From positions 248,001-312,000 of IMG/VR virus record IMGVR_UViG_3300049793_000366: a DNA stretch of 64,000 nt; one strand, written 5' to 3'. Below, in pieces: positions 26,856 through 58,337 of this stretch. Below the pieces are notes generated by a model. The model did no database searches, was not told the origin of the DNA, and worked only from the letters and a program-made list of their open reading frames with translations. The translations under genes were made by a program, and so were the position numbers. The stretch's first letter is position 1; every line of letters begins with the position of its first letter.

Positions 26856-28301
26856 TTATAGTCCACCGAATATATCCATAATCACGGTCAATCTTGATGT
26901 TATCTCAGGCATACCTAATGGATCAATAATTGAATTGATAGGTGATAAGATACATTTAAAAAATTGTGTGTCGTAATCAATTTCTGGAGCATACTCTACT
27001 GGATGCGATCCTCTTATGTATGCGAATACGTTATTGTCACCCTTACAATAGTAATATTTAATCTTAGTACCAGATTTGATAAATGTGTATTTATCTTGAT
27101 ACTTTTGATTCTTATATAGTAAGTGATTATATAACGCCGCTGCTTTTACTGCAAAGTGCGCTCCACTCACGAATTCTAGTTTCTCTTTATCATCAAGAAC
27201 TTTCTCGTTGTAGTTAGAACATGATGACTGCATTGCTATCTCATCGATATCTGCTAATTCAAATTCTTTACGTAAGCCTTTTACTAACTTTAATAATTCT
27301 TTGATGTTGAATGATTCTGGATTTGTAAATAAATATTTTACAATATCTACAATCTTCTCCCTTGCGAAAGCTGGTGTTGATGAACGTACAAGCTCTACAC
27401 CTTTTGGATATAAGTACTTGAAACGTTCGTGTGGAATACCATCCTCCCAAGATACGTGTTGTATGTATTTCTTCTTAGCGATGTTTATAATAGACTCTGA
27501 TACACGCTCTAACTCGAAATCTTCCTTATTGTCTACACCGAATGAACCAGCGTATTCTTCTAATGAATCTCTAAAGAATTGTGCTATTCTGAATTTATCA
27601 ACAGCGTGTACAAAATCTAACTCTCTGAAAAAGTTAGGGATAATCTTAGTAGTAACATCTTTTAAATCCTTACTACCAACAAAGTAGCCATCAATAACTA
27701 ATGTTTCTATATTATTATCAGCTATAACATTTTTAATGTTTTTTAAGCCACCTATACCAAAGTTATCATACTCTGCTATGTAACCAATGAAACTTGGATT
27801 ATCAATTTCAATATCAATTTCATTTCTAAGTAATATTGCAAATGGTTTATCGATAGTTGATAAGAACTCATCATTGATTACTTGATTTTTCCAATCACAT
27901 CTTTTTATAGCTGGACCAAATCCAACAAACACTGAGTCGGTATCAGCGTAGATACTAACTTCTAAATCGCCTGGTTTTTCTGGGTCTATTGGTGTTAATG
28001 GTTTTACATTTTTAATATAAAGCATATTATGTAAATCAGTATCAAGATGCCATTGATTCCACCAATAATCTTGAGTTTTCTTAGACATGGTTTTAGTTAA
28101 ATCACGTCCTTGTGCTGTTATCGTACCAGCTACTTGGTTATTGAATAATATGAAGTGTTGATTAGCGAAGGCTCCATATGAACCATTTAGTACGAGTTTA
28201 AGAGCTAATTGCAAGGCATTATAATAATCCACTTCTTTTTTAAGTGTATTAGCCTTGTTTTTAAGTTCTTCTATTTTATTTATCTTTTCCGTCCTTGTCA
28301 T
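26856..28301 (-). CDS. Family B DNA polymerase, C-terminal subunit (split gp43B-like)
   Basis: KLVLNGSYG (motif B), YADTDS (motif C), AKKKY, KGVE..RSSTP; no exonuclease or motif A. Confidence 0.9.
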   Translation of the reverse strand: MTRTEKINKIEELKNKANTLKKEVDYYNALQLALKLVLNGSYGAFANQHFILFNNQVAGTITAQGRDLTKTMSKKTQDYWWNQWHLDTDLHNMLYIKNVKPLTPIDPEKPGDLEVSIYADTDSVFVGFGPAIKRCDWKNQVINDEFLSTIDKPFAILLRNEIDIEIDNPSFIGYIAEYDNFGIGGLKNIKNVIADNNIETLVIDGYFVGSKDLKDVTTKIIPNFFRELDFVHAVDKFRIAQFFRDSLEEYAGSFGVDNKEDFELERVSESIINIAKKKYIQHVSWEDGIPHERFKYLYPKGVELVRSSTPAFAREKIVDIVKYLFTNPESFNIKELLKLVKGLRKEFELADIDEIAMQSSCSNYNEKVLDDKEKLEFVSGAHFAVKAAALYNHLLYKNQKYQDKYTFIKSGTKIKYYYCKGDNNVFAYIRGSHPVEYAPEIDYDTQFFKCILSPINSIIDPLGMPEITSRLTVIMDIFGGL

Positions 28302-35426: not shown

Positions 35427-35888
35427 ATGACAACACGACCATTTATTTTATATTTTAGCTTCATGCTTACATTTTTAGCACTCGCTATATTTGTACACCC
35501 GTTATACACGATAGGCTGTGCTGTACCGGCAGTTGTACTCACTATTATGGAGTTTATAATATGCTCTGATTCTGATGATAGTAAAATTTTTGCGTTTGTC
35601 TATATTGGTAAACTAAAAAGGGTGAAAACAGAATTTAGTAGATTCTATGTAACCGTCAATAATAAAAAACGTTCTGTTTTATATCAAGATAAGTTTTTTT
35701 ATATGAAAAGTATATCATATACAGGTTTTGAAAATATGGATAAGCTAAAGGAGTGGGTGAAGCATAATGTTGAATATACTTGTTCAAACATTAAAGCTAA
35801 ATCAGATTTAAAGAAGGAATTGATGTTATGGAATGGCCACATTGATAAACAGGTCGAAAGAAATGAAAAATTAAACGAAGTATTATGA
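35427..35888 (+). CDS. Membrane protein with C-terminal R-tag (ERNEKLNEVL)
   Basis: Two N-terminal TM segments; motif. Confidence 0.7.
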   Translation: MTTRPFILYFSFMLTFLALAIFVHPLYTIGCAVPAVVLTIMEFIICSDSDDSKIFAFVYIGKLKRVKTEFSRFYVTVNNKKRSVLYQDKFFYMKSISYTGFENMDKLKEWVKHNVEYTCSNIKAKSDLKKELMLWNGHIDKQVERNEKLNEVL

Positions 35889-37159
35889 AGGTAGATGTAC
35901 TATTAGGATTGCAATGGGGTGACGAGGGAAAAGGAAAACTTGTTGATTTTATAACTCCGAATTACGATATAATCGCGAGATTTCAAGGTGGTGCTAATGC
36001 TGGTCATACACTTATATTCAATGGTGAGAAACACGTATTACATTTGATACCATCTGGTATTTTCAGAGATAATTGTGTGAATGTTATTGGTAGTGGTGTA
36101 GTTATCGATCCTATATCATTAAAAGAAGAAATACAAACATTAGAATCATTTGGTATAGATGTTAAATCTAAACTTCTGATTTCAAGAAGAGCGCATTTGA
36201 TATTACCGACACATAGACTTTTAGATAAAGCTTCTGAGCAATCAAAAGGTAAAAGTAAAATTGGTTCAACACTTAAGGGAATTGGACCAGCTTATATGGA
36301 CAAGACTGGTAGAAATGGAATTCGCGTTGGTGATATAAAGAATGATAGTAAATTAAATTATCAGAAGTTAGTTCAAAAACATTTGGATTTATTATCTATC
36401 TATGAAGATTTTGAAATTGATGCAAATCAATATGAAGCAGAAGAATTAAAATGGTTTGATGCTATTGAGTTCATTAAATCATATAATATTGTTGATGCTG
36501 AACATTATATTAATAAAGCACTGAGTAATAGAAAGACTGTACTTGCTGAGGGCGCACAGGGTTCTATGTTAGATGTTGACCATGGTACATATCCATTTGT
36601 TACATCTTCCAACACAACAATCTCTGGTGTTTGCTCTGGTCTTGGTGTATCACCACACGCAATTGGTAACATAACTGGTATATTCAAAGCGTATGCTACT
36701 CGCGTTGGTTCTGGTCCATTTCCTACTGAGCTTGATAATGAAGTAGGTGAAAAGATGAGAAGTATCGGTGGTGAATTTGGTGCTACGACAGGTAGACCAA
36801 GACGCTGTGGTTGGTTAGACCTACCAGCATTGAAATATGCTATAATGATTAACGGTGTTACTGAGTTAAATATGATGAAACTTGATGTACTCAGTGGATT
36901 TGAAACTATACAAGTTTGCACTGGGTATCAAATTGGTGATGAAATATTTACAGAAACAATTCCATTTGATTTAAGCACTGAGATAAAACCAATATTGAAA
37001 GAATTCAAAGGTTGGAATGTGGATATCACGGCTATTAGAAATTTCGAAGACTTACCTCAACTTGCTAAGGATTATATTTCATTTATACAATTGGAAACCA
37101 ATAAACCAATCACTCGTATATCTGTTGGTCCCGACAGAACACAGACTATTATGAGATAG
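35885..37159 (+). CDS. purA: Adenylosuccinate synthetase
   Basis: QWGDEGKGK, RFQGGANAGHT, EGAQG..LD.DHGTYPFVTSS, GATTGRPRRCGW. Confidence 0.97.
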   Translation: MKVDVLLGLQWGDEGKGKLVDFITPNYDIIARFQGGANAGHTLIFNGEKHVLHLIPSGIFRDNCVNVIGSGVVIDPISLKEEIQTLESFGIDVKSKLLISRRAHLILPTHRLLDKASEQSKGKSKIGSTLKGIGPAYMDKTGRNGIRVGDIKNDSKLNYQKLVQKHLDLLSIYEDFEIDANQYEAEELKWFDAIEFIKSYNIVDAEHYINKALSNRKTVLAEGAQGSMLDVDHGTYPFVTSSNTTISGVCSGLGVSPHAIGNITGIFKAYATRVGSGPFPTELDNEVGEKMRSIGGEFGATTGRPRRCGWLDLPALKYAIMINGVTELNMMKLDVLSGFETIQVCTGYQIGDEIFTETIPFDLSTEIKPILKEFKGWNVDITAIRNFEDLPQLAKDYISFIQLETNKPITRISVGPDRTQTIMR

Positions 37160-37213: not shown

Positions 37214-38374
37214 ATGATTATTAACTTAAAATCAAAAACAGATTTATCTGGTATCTACGTTGTTTACACTGGGTCTACAAACTTAGAAAAAGCAGGATGG
37301 TACGGACTATCACATTTAATGGAGCATTTAATGTGTAAAACTTTCGACCATTTACAAGAAGAATTTGACCAAGACGGTATCGACTGGAATGCTTGGACAT
37401 CTGACAACGAGATTGTATTTTATCTAACTGGTTTAGATAAGAAAATCGAGAAGTGGAAATATAAATTTGTAGAGTTACTTGGTAACTTCACAATTACTGA
37501 TGAACAGCTTCAAAACGAAAAGCGAATTGTACTTGAAGAGTATATGGATTCGTTTAACGGTCAAGCTGAAGCACACTTTCAGAATCTATCAAGAAAAAAG
37601 TTCGGTCACTACTCACCAATTGGTTTGAGAAAAGACATCGAGAACACAACTCTTAAAGACTGTAAAGACTTCTTCGACTTACAGTATGCTAAGCCAACTA
37701 AAATTATCAATGTATCAGCTAAATCTAAATTTGATGCTGATGTAGAGTTTTCAACAACTGAAATAGCACCAGATTATAAATTCGGTGATTATGATGTAGA
37801 ACTTGAGTTAAATAACGACTTCAAAGACAAAACATCAATTATCATGTTAACACCATTAATCGAAGAAGACTTCGCTTATGTTAACATCATCACTGCTATG
37901 TTGGGTTATGGTTTGAACTCACCTTTATATCAAGAAGTTCGTGAGAACAGAGGATTGTGTTATTACATATCAACTTATCAATCAAGAATGTTTGATAAAG
38001 GTATCGTTAGTATCTCAACAGTAACATCTAATGCAAATGCTCAAGCTGTTATTGACACGGTTAAAATGGTATTAGCAGATCCGGATAAATATTTGACAAA
38101 AGAAAGGTTGAATACGATTATCGAGAACATGAAAGTTCGTAAGAAGAAATCAAAAATCAATCGTTATAACAATGTTTATAAATGGATTGGACCGAGTGAG
38201 TGGTCAAATGATGATATAATTGATACCATCAAATTAAAAGACATCAAGAAAGTATATAAAAAATACTTCAACCCTGATATGTTATACATATCAAATGATA
38301 AAACCGAATTCACTACACCAAAAGAATCAAAAGCTAAAAAGGCACCAGCTAAAAAAGTTAAAAGTGCCCAATAG
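37214..38374 (+). CDS. M16 (insulinase) zinc peptidase
   Basis: HLMEH, NAWT, EKRIVLEE, SPLYQEVRENRGLCY. Confidence 0.9.
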   Translation: MIINLKSKTDLSGIYVVYTGSTNLEKAGWYGLSHLMEHLMCKTFDHLQEEFDQDGIDWNAWTSDNEIVFYLTGLDKKIEKWKYKFVELLGNFTITDEQLQNEKRIVLEEYMDSFNGQAEAHFQNLSRKKFGHYSPIGLRKDIENTTLKDCKDFFDLQYAKPTKIINVSAKSKFDADVEFSTTEIAPDYKFGDYDVELELNNDFKDKTSIIMLTPLIEEDFAYVNIITAMLGYGLNSPLYQEVRENRGLCYYISTYQSRMFDKGIVSISTVTSNANAQAVIDTVKMVLADPDKYLTKERLNTIIENMKVRKKKSKINRYNNVYKWIGPSEWSNDDIIDTIKLKDIKKVYKKYFNPDMLYISNDKTEFTTPKESKAKKAPAKKVKSAQ

Positions 38375-47792: not shown

Positions 47793-48127
47793 AAAAGAAT
47801 TTAGAAATACATATTTTAGAATCAGAGATTGCCTTTTCATATATGCTACGTAAGAGAGAAGCATATGAAAGAGGTTCTGATGTTGATCCATTTCAAGTAT
47901 TTACTTATAATGAAATTATAACTAAGTTAGATAGACCATTGTGTGTAATGAAGAATGCAATGCAATTGGACTTAGAAGATGATAAAAATTATAGTAATAC
48001 TTTTTCATATATCTGTATGTCAATGTCTGAGAGGGGTAATAATGAATTTAAAGCAAATGATTTTAAGAGTTATAGAGATAGTTATATAAGAGAAAATAAA
48101 ATAGAAAGCATATTAAATGATATCTGA
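47762..48127 (+). CDS. Hypothetical protein with C-terminal R-tag (IRENKIESIL)
   Basis: ORF; start uncertain. Confidence 0.65.
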   Translation: MEKRLTNKILKKNLEIHILESEIAFSYMLRKREAYERGSDVDPFQVFTYNEIITKLDRPLCVMKNAMQLDLEDDKNYSNTFSYICMSMSERGNNEFKANDFKSYRDSYIRENKIESILNDI

Positions 48128-48545
48128 AATTAAAGACATACTTAAAGAGGGTAAGATAGAAACGTTGGAACAATTTAAGCCCATATTTATGGGATTTGCT
48201 GATGTCACTTATTCATATTGTGGTTATATAAGAACATCTGTTTATGTAAAGGCAAAAGAAGCTGGTGAGTTAGAATATTATAAAGAGAAATCAAATCAAT
48301 GGGAAGTGTTTATGCGAGGTCATGTTGATTTGTTTATTGATATGTATGAGCAAGACCGTTATATGTCAGTTTATAACAATAGTAATCTAGAAATGTTATT
48401 TAATCAAGTGGGTACAGTATGGCAAAATGTATCACAACTATCAGAAGAAGCTAACTACCGATTGGATCTTAATTTACTCACTTTTATGAATTATTACAGA
48501 GATTTAATCAGAGTGGATAAGCTTAATAATTTATTAAAAGAATAG
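48117..48545 (+). CDS. Hypothetical protein with C-terminal R-tag (IRVDKLNNLL)
   Basis: ORF; motif. Confidence 0.7.
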   Translation: MISEIKDILKEGKIETLEQFKPIFMGFADVTYSYCGYIRTSVYVKAKEAGELEYYKEKSNQWEVFMRGHVDLFIDMYEQDRYMSVYNNSNLEMLFNQVGTVWQNVSQLSEEANYRLDLNLLTFMNYYRDLIRVDKLNNLLKE

Positions 48546-48547
48546 TA

Positions 48548-48573
48548 GAACTTTCATCCCAATAGCTATATAA
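48548..48573 (+). promoter_or_regulatory. Putative middle promoter GAAC-N15-TATATAA
   Basis: Recurring motif. Confidence 0.6.
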
Positions 48574-48596
48574 ATGGATAAATCAAATGTATCCAT

Positions 48597-49160
48597 ATGA
48601 ATATAGTTTTAATTGGGAAACCAGGTTCCGGTAAGGGAACAGCTTGTAAGCAGATAGCAGATGAATTCGGTCATACAGTTGTAGTAGCTGGTGATTTATT
48701 AAGAACTGAGAGAGCATCTGGTTCTAAACTGGGAAAGAGAATACAATCTATAATTGATAGAGGTAACTTAGTTCCGAACGACATGATTAATGAAATCATG
48801 GAACAAGAATTCAAAAAAGAATCTAACAATCCAAACTTTTTAATTGATGGTTACCCAAGAACTGTTATGCAAGCAATTTCGCTTGACCAAATGGTTAAGG
48901 TTGACTTAGTACTTTACTTCGATGTTGCGGATGATATAATTCTTAAACGAATTGAAGAGCGTGGTAAAGTATCTGGTAGAGCAGACGACCAGGACATCGA
49001 AATAACCAAACAACGTTTATCAAATTATTATACTGAGACTTACCCAGCAGTTGAATATTACAAAAAGCAAAATAAGCTTAAAACTCTTGATGCTTCGAAA
49101 TCGGCAGAAGATGTTTATGTTGATATACTTGATATATTAGGTCAAGTTGAAAAAAATTAG
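48597..49160 (+). CDS. adk: Adenylate kinase (short LID)
   Basis: GKPGSGKGT, GDLLR, G.LVP, IDGYPRT..QA, GRADD. Confidence 0.95.
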   Translation: MNIVLIGKPGSGKGTACKQIADEFGHTVVVAGDLLRTERASGSKLGKRIQSIIDRGNLVPNDMINEIMEQEFKKESNNPNFLIDGYPRTVMQAISLDQMVKVDLVLYFDVADDIILKRIEERGKVSGRADDQDIEITKQRLSNYYTETYPAVEYYKKQNKLKTLDASKSAEDVYVDILDILGQVEKN

Positions 49161-49169
49161 TATATTAGT

Positions 49170-49619
49170 GTGGGATTTAACAAACGGTTCGTGAATAAAG
49201 AAACAATATTAATAGCATTAAAAGAAGAAGGAGTAAAGGGACTTATACAAGTACTTAATGCTGATGCTTTGATAACCGATGAGTGGGCAAGTCTATTCAT
49301 TGATGATTACTCAAAAAACACGAAGGGGTTTTTAAAAGCAAGAACATTAATAGAATCTGAAACTAAATTCTCATCAACGCATAGTGTTATCTATGGTCAC
49401 AAGTGTTGGAATGATATTGAATCACCAGCTTGTTTATTGGTTATGATGTACACTGACCCAAGCTGGACAGAAGTACTTAAATCTATCGAAATGTTTAACC
49501 CAATTATAGATAAAGATGATGTTGGTAAATTCGACAGATTAAAAGTCAAAGCAATCAAATCTGCAACTCAGTACTTCGATTTAAAAGTAAGAACTGAGAA
49601 TTTAGAAAAACTTATTTAA
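49170..49619 (+). CDS. Hypothetical protein with C-terminal R-tag (VRTENLEKLI)
   Basis: GTG start; motif. Confidence 0.7.
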   Translation: MGFNKRFVNKETILIALKEEGVKGLIQVLNADALITDEWASLFIDDYSKNTKGFLKARTLIESETKFSSTHSVIYGHKCWNDIESPACLLVMMYTDPSWTEVLKSIEMFNPIIDKDDVGKFDRLKVKAIKSATQYFDLKVRTENLEKLI

Positions 49620-49651
49620 AAATAGAGGCTGGTATATTGAATATATAATTA

Positions 49652-50374
49652 ATGGATTTTTCTGTTAATTATTACCTAGTGTTGGGTGTCTCCAATAAAT
49701 CTACGGATAAAGAAATAAAGCTTGCTTATTACGATAAGTCAAAGACGCTTCACCCAGATAAAGGTGGGGATCCGGAAGAGTTTAAAAAAGTAGCTGAAGC
49801 CTACAAAGTATTATCTTCAAAAGAAGGTCGATTAGAATATAATAAGAAATCAAAATTCGGAAGTGATTACGAAGAATTGTGGGACTTATTAAACTTCGAG
49901 TTCTCAAACATCAACAAAGTTTACGATAAGGATGGATTAGATAAATTCAAGAAGAACGAAATTCTTGATATTGTCTATACAATCGATGATACCTTCAATG
50001 GTAACATAGAATATGAGCGTTGGATTACTTGTAAAACGTGCAATGGTTCTGGTGGTGTCGAAGGTAAGTTCGCGATTAAAGATGCGTCAGGTAAAGTTAT
50101 AACCAATTTACAGACAGGTGATGAATGTGACTTCTGTGAAGGTTCTGGTAAACAAATGTGGGATGGTCAAGAGTGTTCATATTGTAATGGTAAGGGTAAA
50201 TTCAGCTCTGTCGCTTGTAGTTCGTGTAATGGCCAGAAAAGAATTCTATTTAAAGAGCGATTTAAAATATCACCCAATAAGATAAGTTCGGACAAATTTA
50301 GGGTGGATTTCCGAGGAAATCAGTCTAAAGATGGTAAAATAGGTCACCTTTGGTTGGTTAAGAAGAAACTTTAA
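49652..50374 (+). CDS. DnaJ-like co-chaperone (J domain and zinc fingers)
   Basis: LHPDKGG; four CxxCxGx repeats; AATATATA at 49640-49647. Confidence 0.9.
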   Translation: MDFSVNYYLVLGVSNKSTDKEIKLAYYDKSKTLHPDKGGDPEEFKKVAEAYKVLSSKEGRLEYNKKSKFGSDYEELWDLLNFEFSNINKVYDKDGLDKFKKNEILDIVYTIDDTFNGNIEYERWITCKTCNGSGGVEGKFAIKDASGKVITNLQTGDECDFCEGSGKQMWDGQECSYCNGKGKFSSVACSSCNGQKRILFKERFKISPNKISSDKFRVDFRGNQSKDGKIGHLWLVKKKL

Positions 50375-50426
50375 TTGACTGATAATCAGCATTTTAGCAA
50401 TTATTTTTAATTTTAGGACGAAAAAA

Positions 50427-50458
50427 TTTGGTAATCCGAGTATTTCATCCTATATTTG
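50427..50458 (+). promoter_or_regulatory. Early promoter TTTG-N20-TATATTTG
   Basis: Perfect consensus. Confidence 0.85.
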
Positions 50459-50492
50459 TATTATAAATTAATAATAACTTAAATCAACTACT

Positions 50493-51065
50493 ATGAAAAT
50501 GCTAAAAAGTCTACTTATCGTTTTAATGACAGTTTTAACTGTTAATTCATTCTCTCAGACTGTTCATACTTTTAACTATACCGACAATGGTATGACTTTC
50601 ACTTGTAATTCCGGTGATACCGTATTATTCTATAATAATAGTGGTGTTAATGTGTATGCAATATCTGTTGATGGTGGTTCTCCTATAACTGGTGTGACCT
50701 CGAATGGTTCATTTGCTACTTATAAGTATGTAGTTCCAGTAACAGCATCAATGACTCACACGTTAGTAATGGCTACCGCTGGTGGTAATAGCACATCATA
50801 TTGGAATGTCACTTCTATTACAACGGGTATTAGTTCACATAGTTCTCTTGAAACTAATATTAGAGTGTTCCCTAATCCTGTTATTGACTTCTTAAATATA
50901 ACAACTCCTATTGACGCTACTCTTAAATTATACAATATCAATGGTCAATTAGTTATGACTGAGAAAGTAACAGAGGGTGATAATAAAATTTTTGTTGAAA
51001 ATTTAGCATCTGGTATCTATATCGCTACGGTGAATAGTAAAGTTGTTAAGTTAGTCAAGCCGTAA
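50493..51065 (+). CDS. Secreted protein with T9SS type-A C-terminal sorting domain
   Basis: Signal peptide ending SFS-Q; VFPNPV..FLNI...LYNINGQLV...LASGIYI...KLVK. Confidence 0.9.
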   Translation: MKMLKSLLIVLMTVLTVNSFSQTVHTFNYTDNGMTFTCNSGDTVLFYNNSGVNVYAISVDGGSPITGVTSNGSFATYKYVVPVTASMTHTLVMATAGGNSTSYWNVTSITTGISSHSSLETNIRVFPNPVIDFLNITTPIDATLKLYNINGQLVMTEKVTEGDNKIFVENLASGIYIATVNSKVVKLVKP

Positions 51066-51093
51066 TGAGTGTGTGTATCGTGTATGTCAAAGA

Positions 51094-51124
51094 CAAAAAA
51101 GGGAGATAATATCTCCCTTTTTTG
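51094..51124. terminator. Bidirectional intrinsic terminator
   Basis: CAAAAAAGGGAGAT-AAT-ATCTCCCTTTTTTG between convergent genes. Confidence 0.9.
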
Positions 51125-51130
51125 TTTCTG

Positions 51131-54100
51131 TTATTCTGGTATTATGAAAACTGCTATCTCTATTTCTACATCTATTGGATTGAAACCACCACCACTTCCT
51201 GGTGCTGATACTATCGAGTCAGTACTTAATACGACATTATCAATGAATGAGAAGTTCTGGTTAGTATAATCAATATATGGAGCTACCGCAGTGTATGGTA
51301 TCTGTAAACCATAGTTAATATTAGATGCTGTCGCATTCGTATATTTATAGAACGGTATCATGTCTACCTCATAGAACTTTAGATTATCTAATACAGCAGA
51401 GAAAGATCCACCGATGTACATATCCATATCAACTCTATTATAGAAATATTCCATTTTTTTCATTGTTGGATCTGGATTACTTCTCACTGGATTATGCTGA
51501 TACATATACGCACCATCTATATCAGCATTGAAGTATAAATTTTCCAATGGACCTATTGGTATTACAACTTCAAATCCTAATATTATAATGGTTATAAATT
51601 CAACTCTATTACCATACATATCACCACCATATATTCCAGCAGTACCAGACCAAGTATAACTATCAAACTCAACCATTGTGTATCTACCAATTTCTAAACT
51701 ATCCAATATAGAATCATGTGTTAGTATTGCTAAGTTACTCTCATCAGTTGAGAAAGATACTCCTTTTGGTTTTGTATTATTTGGATATCCATCCATTATG
51801 AATAATGCTGGTTCGCTAATACCATCCACTAACGATGGATTAGTTACATCTTGATATAATGCCTTACTAAGAGTACCATAAACATTAGATACTGTCCAAC
51901 CATACGTGTAGATGTTTGGTCTGTTGAATTTGGAAGCTCTATCAATAAAATCGACATATGTATTATACTTATAACCTAAATTATAATCTCTAAATGTGAG
52001 TGAATTACTATCACGCATATTAGATACTGATTCTAAAATATCACTTGTAATTAAACCTTGATAGTTTGTTCTAGTATATTCATTACCACTATCATCTAAT
52101 ATAATTTGGTCAAAGAAAATATTAGATACATACTTAGTATCATAATTGATATCCATCCAAGAATTATATAAATGTGTTGTTGATGTTGTAGCAACGTCCA
52201 TATCTTTGAACTTCATCTTCTGAATAACAGATGTAGAAACAGTTCCAGTTTGAGTAGCTATAAATCTACCACCTTCGAAGCTACCATCTATCCAGTGTGT
52301 CTTATCCATCACTGTTAAGAAAGGGAATCCAGCAAATAACCCTGAATTCCAAATACCAGTAAACTTACCATTTAAGAAAGCACCTGATAACCAAATATTC
52401 TTACTGACATGAATTTTATGACTCTCTGAATCTTTAACAATTTCATGTATAGGGAAATTAACCATTGCTTCAACAGTTAAACTTCTCGATGTTGGATTAG
52501 AAACAATTGTATAGTAACCTCTTATTAGTTTTCTTCTCTCATTAATATCATGTGATGTGACGTTACTAATAGAAACAACATCACCAGCAGTTAAACCACC
52601 GAATGTTGCACCAGTAACAGTAAATTGCCATCTACTGCGTGTTATTTGAATACAGCGAGTAACATCATCTAATTCAATATATGATGATGCAGTAGCGTAT
52701 TGTACACCGCCTATTATGCTTGTAGTATCAACTCTCCATCCATTATTCCAAACACCATTTTCCCAAACACCACCTAAGAATCGGCCATTACCAGCTTTTG
52801 TTCTGATACCTTTACCACTAACTGTTGCTGAGTATGTCCAGCTACCATAGCTTGGTAATGGACCAACTGTACCTACAATTGAACCAGAACCATAAACGAT
52901 TGGTGTGTTCAATATGGTATTATTCAGTGTACTATATGTGCCTGTTGTGTTGAACGCATTCCATAAGTGTAAATTGGTATTTGTTGCCGAAGTATCAATT
53001 TTTACGTAGTTTAATATTTGATGCGCTCTTAATAATAACTCAGTTGTTTCTTTTGAGTATGTTCCAATATTTCCACTGCCGTTTGATACGCTACCAACTA
53101 TATAGTCAGAGCCATACCAGTTACCATTTTTCCATGTACCATCTTTCCACACTATATTCCTTGCGAAACCATACCACCAAACACCATCTTTCCAGAAAGC
53201 ACCAGACATTGTACCATTTTTCCATAAACCATTCTCCCAACATGAATATGCGAATTCACCATCATTCCATATACCGTTATTCCAGTAACAAGATTGTGTA
53301 CCATATTCAAATGTACTCATTGTAGCATTGTTAGCTTTATATGAGTAACCATCAGAACCTAAGTATGTATCTACACGATAGTCAGTTCTTGACAACGGTG
53401 TTGGTAGTAAACCACCCGCTGTACCGTAAATATAATTTAAACTCAATGGGCGAAGAACAAACGGATTGAAATAACCATTTGTCCATGTACCATTCTTCCA
53501 AACACCATTCATCCACATAGAGTTAGTGAACTCAGCATTAGAGTGGTCTACTGTACCATTTATCCATTTGACATTTTCGAATAAAACTTTGTTGTTATTC
53601 TTAACTTCATCCTTACGTCTAATTAATGTTGTGAATAATTTCTTATCCTTATTTAATTTTCTTGTATCATCGATTACAGTTCCATTTACCCAAAGACCTC
53701 TGAAAGAAGCAGTAGGATTCAAGAAGAAGTTATTGAATTGTGTCTTACCAGCAACAGCAGAAAAAGTAGCTGCGTTACTTGTAAATGTACCTTTCATAAA
53801 TACACCATTCTTCCAAACTTTACCTTGAAATCTACCATCGTTAAATGAACCATCAGCCCAAGATGAATCAAATACACCATTGTTGAAATTACCATTATGC
53901 CAGTTAGTAATAAAGTTATGTCGAACTTCATCAAATGGTGCATATGTTAATTCACCTTGTGTAATAATCTGTGCGTGGTCGAAGCTATAGCCATCGGCTC
54001 CGAAGTAACCATTATTGAAGTTACCATTCATCCAGAACGCGGCATTTCCTTGAAAATAACCACCATTAAAGTTACCGTTTTTCCAAACAGCGAAATTCTT

Positions 54101-57100
54101 AAATATGGCCCCACTTTCCATAACAGATGAATTACCAAATGGTAAATCAGTTATTACTACTGAATATGTTCCTGTCTTCTGAACACCTGTAATTACAGCC
54201 GCATCATTATATGATGTGTTTAATGAATCAGAGAATTTATTAATGAATATTTTAGATCCGGTTCCGTAAACACCATTATCAACATTTGTAGAATCATTAA
54301 TAAATAATCCTAAATTACCAGACACATAACTTGTGTCAATCCAATAGACTGGTGCTGGTGAATTTCCTTGAAATATACCATCATTAAATTCTCCATTCTC
54401 CCAAATAAATGTATCTAACCACGTAGAACCCAGTGTAGCATTTCTAGCAACACCATTATACCAATGACCAGATAACATAGAATTCTTCTCTATGCTAAAT
54501 CGAGTATCACCGAATTCACCATTATAGTGATTACCAAAATACCAATATGTATTATAAATTTTACCATTTAGCTTATCACCATTATACCAAATACTGTTGT
54601 ACATTTCTCCATTTTCGAATGTACCGTTATGCCATGTATAACCATAAGGAGACTGCATCCAGCTTCTATATAAGACAGGATTTACCGGATTAGTAGTCCA
54701 AGTCCATACGATTGGTTCAAAGTCACCAGTAGCGTTCTGATTCGTTGAGTCAGCGAAAATACCGTTCTTAAATATACCACTATTCCACATAGATTGCTTT
54801 ATCAATCCATTTGTAAATGTACCCTTAACCCAATATGAGTCATAAACTATACCACTTGTAAATGTTGGATAGTCGAATACACAATTGTAGAAAATACCTG
54901 ATTTGATATTGGTATTATTACCAAGTCTTGTTTGCTTGAAGTATGTGCCATTAACTGCATCATAATATTGAGAGTCAACATCAGTTACATCAGATGTGAA
55001 TAAGAAATTAATTACTTTAAGTGTATCAACATTAGTTCTAACAAGTGATGTATCAAAATTATTAAAGTTTCTATTCGCTATCGTAGAGTTTTTGAAGAAT
55101 GTTCTTGCAAATACACCAGACTGTACAGTTGACTTGTTTATTTTTACTTTACTAATACTTAAGAAGTTTGGCATATTCATACCGAAGTAACTACTTATGT
55201 TACTAGGGTTTGTAGTAGCATCATATGTATAGAAGAAGCCTGAGTTAAATCCATAATTAGTTTGGATTAACAATCTTGTGTTATACATAGTATTTAAGTT
55301 AGTAATTGCCTCAGAATCTAAAGCATCTAAATATAAAACTCTCGTTGAGCCAGAGAATGCCATTGTTGTAACAGTATAAGCACCATTCAATGAATATGCT
55401 TGTGTCGTTTCAGACATAGTAGCAGACATAGGATCAGGACTTGAAACTGGAATCCAAACAATATTATCTAAATAAATAACATCACCTGGTGTGAAGTTAT
55501 TATCTAACCAACTCGTATTAAGAGCTGAATATTTTAAATTTATCTGTAATGATTGTGTTGAACCAACTGAAATATCCAATTGATTATTAGCATTCTGACT
55601 AACTTGATAGTTGTAGTTATTAATTAAGTTACCATACTCCCATGTTGAGTTATCCATGTAGCCAGATTCATACTCAGCATCAATAATATATGGTGTTTCA
55701 ATTACATCAAGTCTATTGAATTTCAATACCCAATCATACCACTGTTTAGCAGTAGTAATTGATGCTATGAATCCTGGGAAATTATATTCCATAGTGATAT
55801 CCAATGACGGCTTCTCTATGTCAGCAACCTGTGTTGTAATTGGTAATACAAGTCCTATTCCAAAGAATGTGAAGTACGCAAATGTAGTTTCATCTCTCAC
55901 TGTGTTTTCAGCCGCAGTTTTAACAACGCAGTTAATTTCACCAGCCATTGAAGCACCACTGAACATTTTTATTTCTTCGTTGTACTTATTTAAGTAAAAT
56001 ACATTTTCGAACTTATCGAATGTTGCATCCTTGTCAAATTTAATACCCTTTAAATAGAAAGATTCAAGGTTTGATAATTTATGAATATCTGTTTCATTGA
56101 TGTATAGCTTATATCGAACTGTTTGCTTACCGTCTATCGTTGTGTAAAAGAATTTACTAATATCAGTTATAACAATAGATGAATCGGCTTTGAATTTTGA
56201 ATTAGATAAAACTGATTTAGAAATATGTGAATTCAAAACACTTGAATTTGAAAACTTACCTTCTAATACATTAGTTGATTGAACCTTTACGTTTGAATAG
56301 TTACCATTGTAAATAAATGAATCAGCTATTTTACCACTTTTGATAGTAACATCAGTTGAGAATGTAGTTCCTGTTATATAATTTGGTACAGCAGAAGCAG
56401 TGTATGATAATTTACCCAACTGTGCGTTAATGAAGTTACCATTAGTAACTACACTTGATTGTATAGAACAGTCAAGGAAATAATTATAACCATTCCCTCT
56501 ATTATTTGATTTATCTGTTGTTTGTTTTGCTAATCCATTATCAATAGTTGAATAGTAGGAGTCCTGTACAATAGAATCTGATAATGATTGAATATCACCT
56601 GATATCCAGTTAGTATTAACAGCAACACCAGATTGCCAAAGACTCTTTTCGTTTTTCTTCCAATTAATTCTATTATCATATGAACCATATACACCATCTG
56701 ACCAAGAACCATTAAATTCACCTCTTCTGAAATTTGATTTGGATATTATTGCTTCTCTGTATGTATGATTAACCTTCCATGTCGCAGTAGGTGAATCAAA
56801 TTCATATACAAACGATGTTTTATAATCAGTAGCATTACCACTACCATTGATATGCGTAAAATCATTACCCATAACAACTACGTTACCAGATTGACTTGCT
56901 GAAACATATGTATTGATATTATTAATATCGTATATGTTAGTCATATTAAACCAAGAGTATGTTCCTGGTGTAGGCTCATTCAATACATAAAATCCAACAC
57001 CTACGTTTCCGAATATTGTTGAGTATGTACCATTTGAGTATAAGATGTTATCTAATCCAATTTCAAATCTGTATTGTTCAGTTGATGTTGAATTTACTCT

Positions 57101-57526
57101 CACTTGAGATAAATATAAAGCTTCACTATCAGAAAAACAGCTCCAAACTTTAATGTGTTCATCAAATTTAGTTTCATTCCAAGGTAGTGCGTCATTATAA
57201 TCCAAGTCAATAGTGATTGCACACTTATCAATTTTTAAGATTCTATAACCATCGTTACCTGCTCTATATCTGTCTTTCTTGACCTTATCATTAGAATCGT
57301 AGTTACCATTTATAATGAATACTCTGTCACCAACTACTAAGTTGGTATTTACTTCAGTATAAATCTTAGTTTTAGCAAATCCACCAATTTCATCCGGTTC
57401 TATAAAGTTTATTAATCTTGATGAAAACTTTCTCGATTTTCCTGATATAGAAGTTAGTGATGCAATTGAGGCGGATGCGCTTAATATTAGATTTCTAAGA
57501 GAACTTGAATTAAGTGTAAGAGCCAT
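51131..57526 (-). CDS. 2131-aa putative virion protein with G-x-[WF]-x-[NDG] pentapeptide repeats
   Basis: Many W.NG.F.NG / W.NG.W.NG runs; TTATATATA upstream at 57547-57555. Confidence 0.7.
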   Translation of the reverse strand: MALTLNSSSLRNLILSASASIASLTSISGKSRKFSSRLINFIEPDEIGGFAKTKIYTEVNTNLVVGDRVFIINGNYDSNDKVKKDRYRAGNDGYRILKIDKCAITIDLDYNDALPWNETKFDEHIKVWSCFSDSEALYLSQVRVNSTSTEQYRFEIGLDNILYSNGTYSTIFGNVGVGFYVLNEPTPGTYSWFNMTNIYDINNINTYVSASQSGNVVVMGNDFTHINGSGNATDYKTSFVYEFDSPTATWKVNHTYREAIISKSNFRRGEFNGSWSDGVYGSYDNRINWKKNEKSLWQSGVAVNTNWISGDIQSLSDSIVQDSYYSTIDNGLAKQTTDKSNNRGNGYNYFLDCSIQSSVVTNGNFINAQLGKLSYTASAVPNYITGTTFSTDVTIKSGKIADSFIYNGNYSNVKVQSTNVLEGKFSNSSVLNSHISKSVLSNSKFKADSSIVITDISKFFYTTIDGKQTVRYKLYINETDIHKLSNLESFYLKGIKFDKDATFDKFENVFYLNKYNEEIKMFSGASMAGEINCVVKTAAENTVRDETTFAYFTFFGIGLVLPITTQVADIEKPSLDITMEYNFPGFIASITTAKQWYDWVLKFNRLDVIETPYIIDAEYESGYMDNSTWEYGNLINNYNYQVSQNANNQLDISVGSTQSLQINLKYSALNTSWLDNNFTPGDVIYLDNIVWIPVSSPDPMSATMSETTQAYSLNGAYTVTTMAFSGSTRVLYLDALDSEAITNLNTMYNTRLLIQTNYGFNSGFFYTYDATTNPSNISSYFGMNMPNFLSISKVKINKSTVQSGVFARTFFKNSTIANRNFNNFDTSLVRTNVDTLKVINFLFTSDVTDVDSQYYDAVNGTYFKQTRLGNNTNIKSGIFYNCVFDYPTFTSGIVYDSYWVKGTFTNGLIKQSMWNSGIFKNGIFADSTNQNATGDFEPIVWTWTTNPVNPVLYRSWMQSPYGYTWHNGTFENGEMYNSIWYNGDKLNGKIYNTYWYFGNHYNGEFGDTRFSIEKNSMLSGHWYNGVARNATLGSTWLDTFIWENGEFNDGIFQGNSPAPVYWIDTSYVSGNLGLFINDSTNVDNGVYGTGSKIFINKFSDSLNTSYNDAAVITGVQKTGTYSVVITDLPFGNSSVMESGAIFKNFAVWKNGNFNGGYFQGNAAFWMNGNFNNGYFGADGYSFDHAQIITQGELTYAPFDEVRHNFITNWHNGNFNNGVFDSSWADGSFNDGRFQGKVWKNGVFMKGTFTSNAATFSAVAGKTQFNNFFLNPTASFRGLWVNGTVIDDTRKLNKDKKLFTTLIRRKDEVKNNNKVLFENVKWINGTVDHSNAEFTNSMWMNGVWKNGTWTNGYFNPFVLRPLSLNYIYGTAGGLLPTPLSRTDYRVDTYLGSDGYSYKANNATMSTFEYGTQSCYWNNGIWNDGEFAYSCWENGLWKNGTMSGAFWKDGVWWYGFARNIVWKDGTWKNGNWYGSDYIVGSVSNGSGNIGTYSKETTELLLRAHQILNYVKIDTSATNTNLHLWNAFNTTGTYSTLNNTILNTPIVYGSGSIVGTVGPLPSYGSWTYSATVSGKGIRTKAGNGRFLGGVWENGVWNNGWRVDTTSIIGGVQYATASSYIELDDVTRCIQITRSRWQFTVTGATFGGLTAGDVVSISNVTSHDINERRKLIRGYYTIVSNPTSRSLTVEAMVNFPIHEIVKDSESHKIHVSKNIWLSGAFLNGKFTGIWNSGLFAGFPFLTVMDKTHWIDGSFEGGRFIATQTGTVSTSVIQKMKFKDMDVATTSTTHLYNSWMDINYDTKYVSNIFFDQIILDDSGNEYTRTNYQGLITSDILESVSNMRDSNSLTFRDYNLGYKYNTYVDFIDRASKFNRPNIYTYGWTVSNVYGTLSKALYQDVTNPSLVDGISEPALFIMDGYPNNTKPKGVSFSTDESNLAILTHDSILDSLEIGRYTMVEFDSYTWSGTAGIYGGDMYGNRVEFITIIILGFEVVIPIGPLENLYFNADIDGAYMYQHNPVRSNPDPTMKKMEYFYNRVDMDMYIGGSFSAVLDNLKFYEVDMIPFYKYTNATASNINYGLQIPYTAVAPYIDYTNQNFSFIDNVVLSTDSIVSAPGSGGGFNPIDVEIEIAVFIIPE

Positions 57527-57575: not shown

Positions 57576-58337
57576 ATGTTTATAGCTACCAACCTAAAAA
57601 TATTTCTAATGGCACTGTTACCGGCTATAACATACGGTATGGTTATCTTTATATCATCTCGATATAAGTCAATTTCAATCAAAAAAGGCTTAGGTTACTT
57701 TGCACTCGGTGCTATTTCGGTCACTTTCGTTAATGCCTTTCAATTTACTTTCCCGTACTATCAGGATTGGGTTTTAAGCGAATCCATGCCTATTACAACA
57801 CTATTATTCAAAGCTATATTACAAGTAGCGTTATTAGAAGAGCTGTGTAAATTAGCATCATATAGATTCATTGACTCAGTAAGGCATCGAATTGAACTCA
57901 GACGAGATAAACCAGTAGCTACTATGTTCTATGCGTGTATGGTGTCTGCTGGGTTCGCGGTTATAGAGAATCTTCATTATGTGATGGCTTTCTTTGATAA
58001 AGTAGCACCAAGTGAGTTATTATTAACAAGAGCTTTGAGTGCTGTAATTGTACATATGGTTTGTGGGTTATTTATGGGCTATTTTATAGCACTTGGTAAT
58101 TTAAAGGGTGATATTGATATTTCCGCTATTTCAATCATTCTAAGAAAGAATCCTAGGTGGAGAAAAACACTATACACGACAATTGGTGTCAGTGTTGCTA
58201 TTCTATATCACGGTATATACGATTTTATGGCTTTCTTGGGTGCCAATTTGTTTAATATCATAATTGTCGGACTCTTGATTGCTTATATAATGCATAAACA
58301 ATTGAATTCCATATCAGGTGTCAGAAAACTTCGATAA
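57576..58337 (+). CDS. PrsW family intramembrane glutamic protease
   Basis: Multi-TM; LEELCK, GFAVIEN, VH...G, HGIYD. Confidence 0.85.
   Translation: MFIATNLKIFLMALLPAITYGMVIFISSRYKSISIKKGLGYFALGAISVTFVNAFQFTFPYYQDWVLSESMPITTLLFKAILQVALLEELCKLASYRFIDSVRHRIELRRDKPVATMFYACMVSAGFAVIENLHYVMAFFDKVAPSELLLTRALSAVIVHMVCGLFMGYFIALGNLKGDIDISAISIILRKNPRWRKTLYTTIGVSVAILYHGIYDFMAFLGANLFNIIIVGLLIAYIMHKQLNSISGVRKLR

What the first reader, a model, noticed from the sequence alone, without database searches (positions are those of the whole stretch)
50427..51124. Phage cassette encoding a type IX secretion substrate
SEEN: a self-contained unit of early promoter, signal peptide, about 90-aa beta-rich domain, T9SS type-A CTD and terminator. 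KNOWN: such CTDs route cargo through the Bacteroidota T9SS to the cell surface. INFERENCE: the phage decorates or jams the host surface early in infection, for superinfection exclusion or to interfere with gliding or secretion.
Basis: partly seen in the sequence, partly recalled or inferred. Interest (0 to 1): 0.6.

Follow-up and report, generated by a model that had tools for sequence, protein, structure and literature searches.

The report
Megaphage gene for a T9SS-exported protein
A roughly 0.5-0.7 Mb soil phage of Bacteroidota carries a small gene, conserved and fast-evolving across its clade, whose product has every sequence mark of export through the host's type IX secretion system; its role outside the cell is unknown.

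Summary
Window 50427-51130 is one transcription unit: a Bacteroidota-type promoter, a 190-aa ORF (50493-51065) and a strong bidirectional terminator.

The ORF encodes a Sec signal peptide, a beta-sandwich of about 90 aa and a type-A T9SS C-terminal domain. The CTD scores 43 bits on TIGR04183 (cut-off 23). Its predicted fold matches solved Flavobacterium substrate CTDs at Z 10.1.

The element is a megaphage: a 508-kb record from a 712-kb soil contig, related to the 635-642 kb 'Mahaphage' genomes.

It is not a mobile cassette. Orthologues sit in the same place (DnaJ-like gene, then this gene, then a convergent giant repeat protein) in all eight phage contexts examined. Promoter and terminator were each conserved in the four lineages aligned, and GC matches the genome.

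The N-domain defines a tiny family. It was not found in 401 sampled Bacteroidota genomes, resembles cupredoxins but lacks copper ligands, and has 5-12 times the dN of the adjacent gene. N-domain and CTD have been shuffled independently.

Phage-encoded T9SS cargo has been published (Cryophage, 2020), so this is a new variant of a known kind. Export is well supported. Superinfection exclusion, early timing and 'jamming' are untested.

The parts
50427..50458 (+). Bacteroidota-type promoter: -33 TTTG (50427-50430), 20-nt spacer containing CCGA...ATCC, -7 TATATTTG (50451-50458)
   Evidence: Sequence read. Member of a genome-wide extended motif aTTTGgtaatCCGGAttattatCCGTATATTTGt. Conserved upstream of the orthologues in L004, LR745206 and LR756502. 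Consensus from PMC6847099.
50459..50492 (+). A/T-rich leader without a Shine-Dalgarno sequence. The transcript start is inferred a few nt after 50458.
   Evidence: Lack of SD is normal for Bacteroidota (PMC6847099, abstract). The start site is inferred, not measured.
50493..51065 (+). ORF of 190 aa (P0001), stop TAA at 51063-51065
   Evidence: About 24 homologous clusters share the same architecture.
50493..50555 (+). Sec (SPase I) signal peptide, aa 1-21, predicted cleavage NSFS|QTVH
   Evidence: Helix 2-18 in the model. No lipobox.
50556..50822 (+). N-terminal cargo domain, aa 22 to about 110. Eight-strand Greek-key beta-sandwich with the family motif T-C-N-x-G-D-T-[LV]-x-F-Y and a closing strand that reads G-T-I-T-V in most members but W-N-V-T-S-I-T in this divergent one. 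Cupredoxin-like but without copper ligands.
50823..50852 (+). Low-confidence Ser/Thr-rich linker, aa 111-120 (TGISSHSSLE). This is where PorU-type CTD cleavage would be expected.
   Evidence: pLDDT below 50 at residues 110-117. The cleavage site is inference from general T9SS knowledge.
50853..51062 (+). T9SS type-A C-terminal sorting domain, aa 121-190 (motifs FPNP, NGQLV, GIY, K-x-V-K at the end)
51088..51130 (.). Bidirectional intrinsic terminator (A6-stem-loop-stem-T6) shared with the convergent gene
   Evidence: Equivalent hairpins with different stem sequences occur in L004, L022 and L024.
51131..57526 (-). Convergent 2131-aa N/S/T/G-rich protein with 5-residue W-x-N-G-x-F repeats. It is a conserved neighbour of the cargo gene and its function is unknown (possibly a fibre).
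49652..50374 (+). Upstream conserved neighbour: DnaJ-like protein (J domain plus CxxCxGxG zinc-finger region)
   Evidence: The adjacency holds in all eight phage contexts.

Best explanation
This is a genuine, clade-conserved gene of a Bacteroidota megaphage.

Proposed mechanism:
1. Host RNA polymerase, with the Bacteroidota housekeeping sigma, transcribes the gene from its own TTTG/TATATTTG promoter.
2. The 190-aa precursor crosses the inner membrane through Sec, and the signal peptide is cut after residue 21.
3. The C-terminal 70-residue type-A CTD takes the protein through the host type IX secretion translocon.
4. The CTD is then expected to be removed. This leaves a cupredoxin-like, metal-free beta-sandwich of about 10 kDa, either on the outer face of the infected cell or in the medium.

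The cargo domain is confined almost entirely to this phage clade. It evolves several times faster than its neighbours and is recombined independently of the CTD. It is therefore most likely a binding module engaged with a variable host surface component. The most probable job is masking a T9SS-dependent surface receptor. That would exclude superinfection and keep progeny from sticking to infected or lysed cells, as T5 Llp does by another export route.

Shown: gene, architecture, synteny, evolutionary rate, promoter class.
Inferred: actual export, CTD cleavage, timing, target.

Sub-probabilities: exported by Sec plus T9SS about 0.8. Acts on the host surface as an exclusion or receptor-masking factor about 0.3. 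The overall confidence of 0.55 is for export plus an extracellular, host-surface-directed role.
For: CTD:
- Above the curated cut-offs of TIGR04183 and PF18962, and located at the extreme C-terminus.
- Confidently folded, with pLDDT about 93.
- Superposes on solved F. johnsoniae and P. gingivalis substrate CTDs: 8glj_D at Z 10.1, rmsd 1.8 A over 70 aa, 26% identity, and also 8glk_D, 8qb1_A, 5m11_A and 4ief_B.

Family and synteny:
- The signal peptide and the PNP, G-x-Y and terminal K motifs are invariant in 23 homologues.
- It is the only T9SS CTD in the 508-kb record. There is a single strong one, the orthologue, in each of LR756502 and LR745206.
- All eight phage contexts show DnaJ-like gene, then this gene, then the convergent giant protein.
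- Promoter and terminator were each conserved in the four lineages aligned, and the terminator stems covary.

Cargo domain:
- The N-domain matched only 5 clusters among 1.84 billion representatives, and one of those is a repeat artefact.
- It matched 0 of 401 sampled Bacteroidota genomes.
- N-domain dN is 0.23-0.26 against 0.02-0.05 for the adjacent DnaJ-like gene in a close trio, and 0.80 against 0.09 for window versus L004.
- It is the least conserved of the syntenic proteins compared with L004.
- Domain shuffling: P0016 versus P0020 share 87% of the N-domain but 33% of the CTD. P0009 versus P0012 share 58% and 99%.

Context:
- Host phylum: the relatives are predicted Bacteroidetes phages (PMC7162821).
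- T9SS and gliding mutations give phage resistance in Flavobacterium, so T9SS-dependent surface molecules serve as phage receptors (10.1101/2020.10.02.323337 and PMC9804748, titles and abstracts).
Against: - No experiment or RNA data exists for this gene. The only public run that holds it is the DNA of its own soil sample.
- The host is unknown, so the presence of a T9SS in it is assumed.
- The N-domain model is of low confidence (pLDDT about 60). Its fold matches are generic, at Z 8.7 or below.
- Omega for the N-domain is 0.28-0.35, not above 1. Relaxed constraint cannot be separated from diversifying selection.
- Nothing identifies the target.
- The neighbouring giant protein could not be shown to be a receptor-binding protein.
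- Many Flavobacterium type-A substrates are released rather than anchored (general knowledge), which would weaken a surface-masking role.
Confidence: 0.55

Rival explanations
1. Released soluble factor. The CTD only gets the beta-sandwich out of the cell. Once free in the medium it binds something else, such as a polysaccharide or matrix component, a host or competitor protease (chagasin-like inhibitor fold), or a small ligand. This would condition the surroundings of the infected cell or protect virions.
For: The top N-domain structural match is a chagasin-family cysteine-protease inhibitor (3m86_A, Z 8.7; also 2h7w_A at 7.1 and 3pnr_B at 6.8). Cupredoxin and copper-chaperone folds score Z 6.8-7.9. 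The Atlas structure search puts plastocyanin-like proteins first (TM 0.64). From general knowledge, many type-A CTD cargos in Flavobacterium are released.
Against: The chagasin NPTTG, GxGG and RPW motifs were not seen when I read the alignment by eye; no pattern search was run. There is no conserved His, so no type-1 copper site. All the Z values lie in the range that the tool describes as common-arrangement matches.
Confidence: 0.2
2. Secretion or gliding interference. Abundant phage cargo competes for PorV/SprA or the attachment complex. This would lower export of host adhesins, enzymes or receptors.
For: A bona fide CTD sits behind a consensus promoter. CTD swapping between lineages could reflect tuning to the host's recognition machinery.
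Against: A small, normally folded cargo should simply pass through the translocon. Nothing in the sequence suggests stalling. If only the CTD mattered, the N-domain would not be conserved as a family across the clade with near-invariant C-x-x-G-D-T and G-T-I-T-V motifs.
Confidence: 0.1
3. Not a T9SS substrate in practice. The C-terminal domain is only an Ig-like sandwich, and the protein works in the periplasm or outer membrane, for example in lysis or envelope remodelling.
For: CTD-like folds also match non-T9SS sandwiches (DUF3244, GH accessory domains) at Z 8-9. No secretion data exist.
Against: The sequence scores clear both curated thresholds by about 20 bits. The domain is exactly C-terminal and keeps the diagnostic motifs in all homologues. 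No lysis genes were seen among the neighbours scanned.
Confidence: 0.08
4. Passenger gene. A degenerate host plastocyanin-CTD gene was captured once and drifts without any role for the phage.
For: There is a collinear 26% alignment to a Bacteroidota plastocyanin+CTD protein (P0027, pairwise E 2e-5). The copper ligands are lost. dN is high. One distant homologue (P0005) lies among bacterial housekeeping genes.
Against: The gene is intact, single-copy and syntenic, with promoter and terminator, across lineages whose DnaJ-like neighbours are only 45-50% identical. Omega is well below 1. The N-domain alone shows no significant similarity to the plastocyanin proteins.
Confidence: 0.05

Closest known systems
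Phage-encoded T9SS cargo proteins of 'Cryophage' (Bellas et al. 2020, Nat Commun 11:4403, PMC7468147)
   Same: A phage genome encodes proteins with type-A T9SS sorting domains. The cargo genes are hypervariable between phage variants. The authors propose hijacking of host secretion, with superinfection or competition roles.
   Different: The Cryophage cargos are an endoglucanase, a GH39 and a PA14 protein, three per genome and located in flexible islands. Here there is one small non-enzymatic beta-sandwich of a family confined almost entirely to this phage clade. It sits at a fixed position in a clade of 0.5-0.7 Mb phages, and its CTD and cargo domain are exchanged independently.
Small Bacteroidota plastocyanin/cupredoxin proteins with a T9SS CTD (for example P0027 and P0030; Atlas cluster 'Copper-bind + Por_Secre_tail')
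   Same: Same size (about 190-196 aa) and the same order of signal peptide, Greek-key sandwich and type-A CTD. Both have a G-D-T-[IV]-x-[FW] strand. There is a collinear 26% alignment.
   Different: No PF00127 hit. The His/Cys/His/Met copper ligands are absent. N-domain similarity is not significant on its own.
Solved T9SS substrate CTDs (F. johnsoniae FspA and NucA in the SprA translocon complexes 8glj/8glk; mirolase 8qb1; PorZ 5m11; RgpB 4ief/5ag9)
   Same: The C-terminal 70 residues superpose at Z 8-10 and rmsd 1.5-2.4 A, with 17-31% identity.
   Different: Those are cellular proteins. The comparison is with a predicted model only.
Phage T5 Llp and phi80/N15 Cor (exported receptor-blocking exclusion proteins; from general knowledge)
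   Same: A small phage-encoded protein that carries an export signal. In T5 the gene lies beside the receptor-binding protein gene. This is the proposed functional analogue.
   Different: Llp and Cor are lipoproteins exported by Sec/Lol. This protein has no lipobox and uses a T9SS tag. There is no homology, no evidence of receptor binding, and the neighbouring giant gene is not shown to be a receptor-binding protein.

Membership tests
T9SS type-A CTD cargo (TIGR04183 / PF18962) | HMM score above the curated cut-off | tested here: met
   TIGR04183 scores 43 bits against 23. PF18962 scores 45.7 against 27. A genome-level search gave 45.8 bits.
T9SS type-A CTD cargo (TIGR04183 / PF18962) | Domain at the extreme C-terminus with the conserved PNP, G-x-Y and terminal K motifs | tested here: met
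   The match covers aa 125-189 of 190. P127, N128, P129, G151, G174, Y176 and K186 are invariant in 23 homologues.
T9SS type-A CTD cargo (TIGR04183 / PF18962) | N-terminal Sec signal peptide | tested here: met
   n/h/c regions with small residues at -3 and -1. The feature is conserved across the family. SignalP was not available.
T9SS type-A CTD cargo (TIGR04183 / PF18962) | Seven-strand beta-sandwich fold of solved CTDs | tested here: met
   pLDDT about 93. 8glj_D at Z 10.1, rmsd 1.8 A over 70 aa; also 8qb1_A, 8glk_D, 5m11_A and 4ief_B.
T9SS type-A CTD cargo (TIGR04183 / PF18962) | The host possesses a T9SS; the protein is secreted and its CTD is cleaved by PorU | not testable with these tools
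   The host is unidentified. Only the phylum is inferred.
Phage-encoded T9SS cargo (Cryophage type, PMC7468147) | Encoded in a phage genome, with the cargo variable between related phages | tested here: met
   The record is a virus with huge-phage relatives. The protein is 45% identical where most of its neighbours are 60-88% identical. dN is 5-12 times that of the neighbour.
Phage-encoded T9SS cargo (Cryophage type, PMC7468147) | Cargo is a glycoside hydrolase or PA14-type domain in a flexible island | tested here: not met
   No enzyme or PA14 domain. The position is fixed in all eight phage contexts.
Cupredoxin / plastocyanin (PF00127, PF13473) | Family HMM match | tested here: not met
   No hit for P0001 or for 5 family members, even at E up to 10. 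hhalign probability against plastocyanin-CTD proteins is 1.3% or less.
Cupredoxin / plastocyanin (PF00127, PF13473) | Type-1 copper ligands (His, Cys, His, Met) | tested here: not met
   There is no conserved His, and P0011 has none at all. The single near-invariant Cys precedes the G-D-T strand rather than lying in the C-terminal ligand loop.
Cupredoxin / plastocyanin (PF00127, PF13473) | Greek-key cupredoxin fold | tested here: inconclusive
   Atlas TM 0.64 to plastocyanin-like clusters, but similar values for Ig and AA9. Z 6.8-7.9 to ephrin, CupA, umecyanin and plastocyanin, on a model with pLDDT about 60.
Chagasin-type (I42) protease inhibitors | NPTTG, GxGG and RPW loop motifs | tested here: not met
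   I did not see the motifs when reading the 23-sequence alignment by eye; no pattern search was run. Only the fold resembles them: 3m86_A at Z 8.7, rmsd 2.8 A over 86 aa, 9% identity.
Llp/Cor-type exclusion lipoproteins | Lipobox with Cys at +1 | tested here: not met
   The cleavage region is NSFS|Q and no Cys occurs before residue 38.
Llp/Cor-type exclusion lipoproteins | Blocks the phage's own receptor | not testable with these tools
   Needs adsorption and plating assays.

The most novel reading that the evidence does not exclude
A whole clade of Bacteroidota megaphages keeps a dedicated, rapidly diversifying surface-masking protein that it posts to the outside of the infected cell through the host's own T9SS. 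The address tag (CTD) would be swapped by recombination to fit each host's secretion machinery, and the cargo domain would track variable receptors. This would be the first superinfection-exclusion or receptor-shielding system that uses type IX secretion.
Probability: 0.25. Interest if true: 0.7.

Novelty: new variant of a known kind. Interest (0 to 1): 0.45.

Why it matters
- Huge phages are known almost only from metagenomes, so their host interactions are guesses. A conserved, single-copy exported protein is a concrete handle.
- The CTD ties the clade to T9SS-bearing Bacteroidota.
- The protein can be tested in tractable Flavobacterium strains.
- The independent exchange of CTD and cargo offers a natural experiment on what T9SS recognition tolerates.
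- If the protein does mask receptors, it would extend phage exclusion strategies to a secretion system that also drives gliding and virulence in fish pathogens. There, phage resistance already maps to T9SS genes.
- If it is only a drifting captured gene, the finding is a modest addition to the 2020 Cryophage report.

Tried and rejected
- E. coli-type promoter scan: no enrichment (20 found against 14.2 +/- 3.9 expected). I replaced it with the Bacteroidota consensus.
- PHROGs: no family for the protein or for the giant neighbour.
- IMG/VR scans with the protein and with the 23-sequence alignment: no confirmed relative.
The scan with P0005 found only CTD-level matches.
I did not resend them. LR756502's protein later came back legitimately as P0013.
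- The first AlphaFold run with 5 sequences gave pLDDT of about 50 for the N-domain.
- Cupredoxin homology: hhalign, a PDB profile search and N-domain-only BLASTP were all non-significant. I therefore call the domain 'cupredoxin-like' by predicted fold only.
- Type-B CTD (TIGR04131): none in the genome, though the control genomes did not ring either.
- RNA evidence: no RNA run holds the locus. Read laying was not used because the only holder is the source sample's DNA contigs.
- The 711.8-kb parent contig is not held, so its first 204 kb could not be searched.
- The giant neighbour gave nothing in Pfam, NCBIfam, PDB sequence search or Atlas features.

Full report
**What is there**

Window 50427-51130 holds one compact transcription unit on the + strand.
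- The ORF 50493-51065 encodes 190 aa.
- NCBIfam TIGR04183 (T9SS type-A sorting domain) matches aa 125-189 at 43 bits against a cut-off of 23. Pfam PF18962 gives 45.7 bits against 27.
- The N-terminus is a textbook SPase I signal. It has the MKMLK n-region, a 12-residue hydrophobic core with a Kyte-Doolittle peak of 2.98, and NSFS with small residues at -3 and -1. There is no lipobox.
- Between the signal and the CTD lies a domain of about 90 residues with eight predicted strands.

**Promoter**

The E. coli-type promoter scan was uninformative. The sequence upstream reads TTTG-N20-TATATTTG (50427-50458). This is the -33/-7 consensus of the Bacteroidota housekeeping sigma factor (PMC6847099).
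- It is one copy of an extended motif, aTTTGgtaatCCGGAttattatCCGTATATTTGt.
- There are 80 hits of TTTG-N17-23-TAnnTTTG in the 508-kb genome against about 33 expected. Of these, 48 have a spacer of exactly 20.
- Of the 62 copies with N19-21, 63% are followed by an ORF start within 51 nt, against 23% for random positions. Several starts are so close that the mRNAs must be nearly leaderless.

**Terminator**

Downstream, a 17-bp hairpin flanked by A6 and T6 (51088-51130) folds at -22.4 kcal/mol (z -5.6). It also ends the convergent gene, so it is a shared bidirectional terminator.

**What genome this is**

- The window is bases 248001-312000 of a 507,910-bp IMG/VR record, labelled 'provirus' and estimated 97% complete, with 33% GC.
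- The same protein lies at about 502.4 kb on a 711,805-bp JGI soil-metagenome contig. By arithmetic, the virus record is that contig from about 203.9 kb to its end.
- Megablast of the 6 kb around the gene (48000-54000) finds no phage record.
- The protein and its 2131-aa neighbour find LR756502 (642 kb) and LR745206 (635 kb). The neighbour also weakly finds the 735-kb LR756501/3.
- These sizes match the four largest complete genomes (634, 636, 642 and 735 kb) of Al-Shayeb et al. 2020. That paper places all of its genomes over 634 kb in the 'Mahaphage' clade and predicts that they replicate in Bacteroidetes (PMC7162821).
- The window also carries replication and nucleotide-metabolism genes. These are a family-B DNA polymerase piece, an SbcC-like ATPase, adenylosuccinate synthetase, adenylate kinase and a metallophosphatase. 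A related 17-kb contig (L004), whose genes match the window's at 46-88% identity, adds a Toprim primase and a D12 methylase at the corresponding positions.
- The T9SS tag, the promoter consensus and the SD-less leader all point to a Bacteroidota host. No genus can be named.

**Not a cassette but a clade gene**

Orthologues occur in LR756502, LR745206 and six metagenome contigs representing five protein variants (P0002, P0009, P0020, P0021, P0022). The arrangement is always the same. A DnaJ-like gene comes first, sometimes followed by a 67-aa ORF. Then comes the CTD protein, then the convergent giant protein, which is often split into ORFs of about 1100 and 1400 aa. In the P0009 and P0020-P0022 contigs, ribosomal protein S21 lies a few genes upstream.
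- The promoter is retained in the four lineages aligned.
- Each lineage aligned has its own A-tract, GC-stem, T-tract hairpin with a different stem sequence.
- GC and GC3 of the gene equal those of its neighbours.
- It is the only T9SS CTD in the record. The orthologue is the single strong CTD in each LR genome.
- No type-B CTD was found.

**The cargo domain**

Pfam, PHROGs and PDB sequence searches find nothing.
- An exhaustive HMMER search of the N-domain against 1.84 billion representatives returned five clusters, one of them a repeat artefact.
- A word-indexed profile search found about 24 clusters at 90% identity. All are 140-199 aa with the same three-part architecture.
- None was found in 401 sampled Bacteroidota genomes or in IMG/VR.
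- Two distant members sit in other contexts. P0005 lies next to panC, a LutB-like gene, a cold-shock gene and a DEAD-box helicase, which is probably a bacterial chromosome. P0003 lies next to a DUF6660 gene.
- The family motif is T-C-N-V-G-D-T-L-K-F-Y ... I-G-Y-Y-V-V ... G-T-I-T-V-N, with one near-invariant Cys. That Cys is not conserved in LR745206.
- The ESM Atlas's own model is closest to plastocyanin/azurin-like clusters (TM 0.64), including a Bacteroidota 'Copper-bind + Por_Secre_tail' cluster. Ig and AA9 sandwiches score much the same.
- My AlphaFold model from 23 sequences has pLDDT of about 60 in this domain. Its best matches there are a chagasin-type inhibitor (Z 8.7), ephrin (7.9) and several cupredoxins (6.8-7.1). 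The tool itself calls this range ambiguous.
- A plastocyanin-CTD protein (P0027) aligns collinearly over the whole length at 26% identity. The N-domain alone is not significantly similar to it.
- The copper ligands are absent.
- I therefore describe the domain as a metal-free, cupredoxin-like Greek-key sandwich, possibly descended from the host plastocyanin-CTD proteins.

**The CTD**

This part of the model is confident (pLDDT about 93). It superposes best on substrate CTDs caught in the F. johnsoniae translocon: 8glj_D at Z 10.1 and rmsd 1.8 A over 70 aa, and 8glk_D at 31% identity. It also superposes on the mirolase, PorZ and RgpB CTDs.

**Evolution**

- Against the closest relative (L004), most flanking proteins are 60-88% identical and two small ORFs are 47-50%. 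This protein is the lowest at 45%.
- In three close phages (L024-L026) the DnaJ-like neighbour has dN 0.02-0.05, the CTD 0.07-0.11 and the N-domain 0.23-0.26. Omega is 0.28-0.35 for the N-domain.
- The two domains have separate histories. P0016 and P0020 share 87% of the N-domain but 33% of the CTD. P0009 and P0012 share 99% of the CTD but 58% of the N-domain.
- So a working CTD is always kept while its sequence is replaceable. That is what one expects of a functional address tag.

**Expression**

No RNA run holds the locus. This is indirect evidence that family members are transcribed.

**Interpretation**

Export through Sec and then T9SS is well supported by sequence and predicted structure. 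I put it at about 0.8.

What the protein does outside the cell is inference. It is small, confined almost entirely to the phage clade, fast-evolving, conserved in position and lies beside a giant repeat protein. This fits a binding module in conflict with a variable host surface component.

In Flavobacterium, phage resistance maps to gliding and T9SS genes. Masking a T9SS-dependent receptor is therefore the most attractive reading, at about 0.3.

The rivals cannot be excluded:
- a released soluble binder or inhibitor;
- competition for the translocon;
- a periplasmic role;
- a drifting captured gene.

**Novelty**

Bellas et al. 2020 (PMC7468147) already reported phage-encoded, hypervariable T9SS cargo. 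They proposed hijacked secretion and a superinfection role. Searches of papers on huge phages found no mention of T9SS.

What is new here:
- a cargo family confined almost entirely to this phage clade;
- its fixed place in a megaphage clade;
- the modular exchange of tag and cargo.

**Limits**

- The host is unknown.
- There are no expression data for this gene.
- The N-domain model is weak.
- Proteins from the LR loci could not be used in folds.

Noticed in passing
whole genome G000; in the window at 2831(-), 4725(-), 32626(+), 44126(+), 50427(+), 58344(+): About 50-60 copies of a long conserved promoter motif (aTTTGgtaatCCGGAttattatCCGTATATTTGt). It contains the Bacteroidota -33/-7 consensus plus conserved CCGGA and ATCCG spacer boxes. 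Many copies sit 1-8 nt before an ATG, which implies leaderless mRNAs. The four in-window genes behind them that I scanned have no Pfam family.
   Followed up: partly
G000 as a whole; L017 (JGI 3300049793 Ga0497410_0000003, 711,805 bp): The 'provirus' record is the last 508 kb of a 712-kb contig. Its relatives are circular phage genomes of 635-735 kb. The first 8 kb of the record already contain genes shared with those phages: a DNA methylase and an IMPDH/GMP-reductase-like gene. The 'host' trimming may therefore be an artefact, and the phage may be about 0.7 Mb.
   Followed up: partly
window 51131-57526 (-): A 2131-aa N/S/T/G-rich protein with at least 34 W-x-N-G-x-F motifs in 5-residue register, resembling a pentapeptide-repeat beta-helix. 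Homologues occur only in the Mahaphage-type genomes. In relatives it is split into ORFs of about 1100 and 1400 aa. No family matched in Pfam, PHROGs, NCBIfam or PDB.
   Followed up: partly
window 49652-50374 (+): A phage DnaJ-like co-chaperone (J domain plus CxxCxGxG zinc finger, without the C-terminal substrate domains). It is always the gene just upstream of the T9SS cargo gene or of its small leader ORF. A functional link to export is conceivable but untested.
   Followed up: no
family alignment A7 (P0016/P0020, P0009/P0012, P0006/P0007): N-domain and CTD have been recombined independently among phage lineages: 87% versus 33% identity in one pair and 58% versus 99% in another.
   Followed up: yes
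P0025 (EukProt EP01012, Entosiphon sulcatum transcriptome): A family member turns up in a protist transcriptome assembly. It presumably comes from phage-infected prey bacteria.
   Followed up: partly
window 57576-58337 (+): A PrsW-family intramembrane metalloprotease gene on the far side of the giant gene (PF13367, 72 bits).
   Followed up: no
window 35885-37159 (+), 37214-38374 (+), 48597-49160 (+), 26856-28301 (-): Auxiliary and replication genes: a full-length adenylosuccinate synthetase (563 bits), an M16 peptidase pair, an adenylate kinase, and a 481-aa ORF that matches only part of family-B DNA polymerase, which may be a split polymerase.
   Followed up: no
L022-L026, about 1.7-2.4 kb upstream of the cargo gene: The relatives carry a ribosomal protein S21 gene a few genes upstream of the locus. 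In the window's genome the S21 match lies about 92 kb upstream of the gene, at window-relative coordinate of about -42,400 and so outside the window.
   Followed up: no
LR745206 (W02) 397551-397733 (+), locus L020: A second, weaker T9SS CTD (24.5 bits, in a 147-aa frame) in one relative. There is no counterpart in the window's genome.
   Followed up: no
P0004 (1076 aa): A hit in the exhaustive search that is merely the translation of a tandem DNA repeat. It is not a relative.
   Followed up: yes
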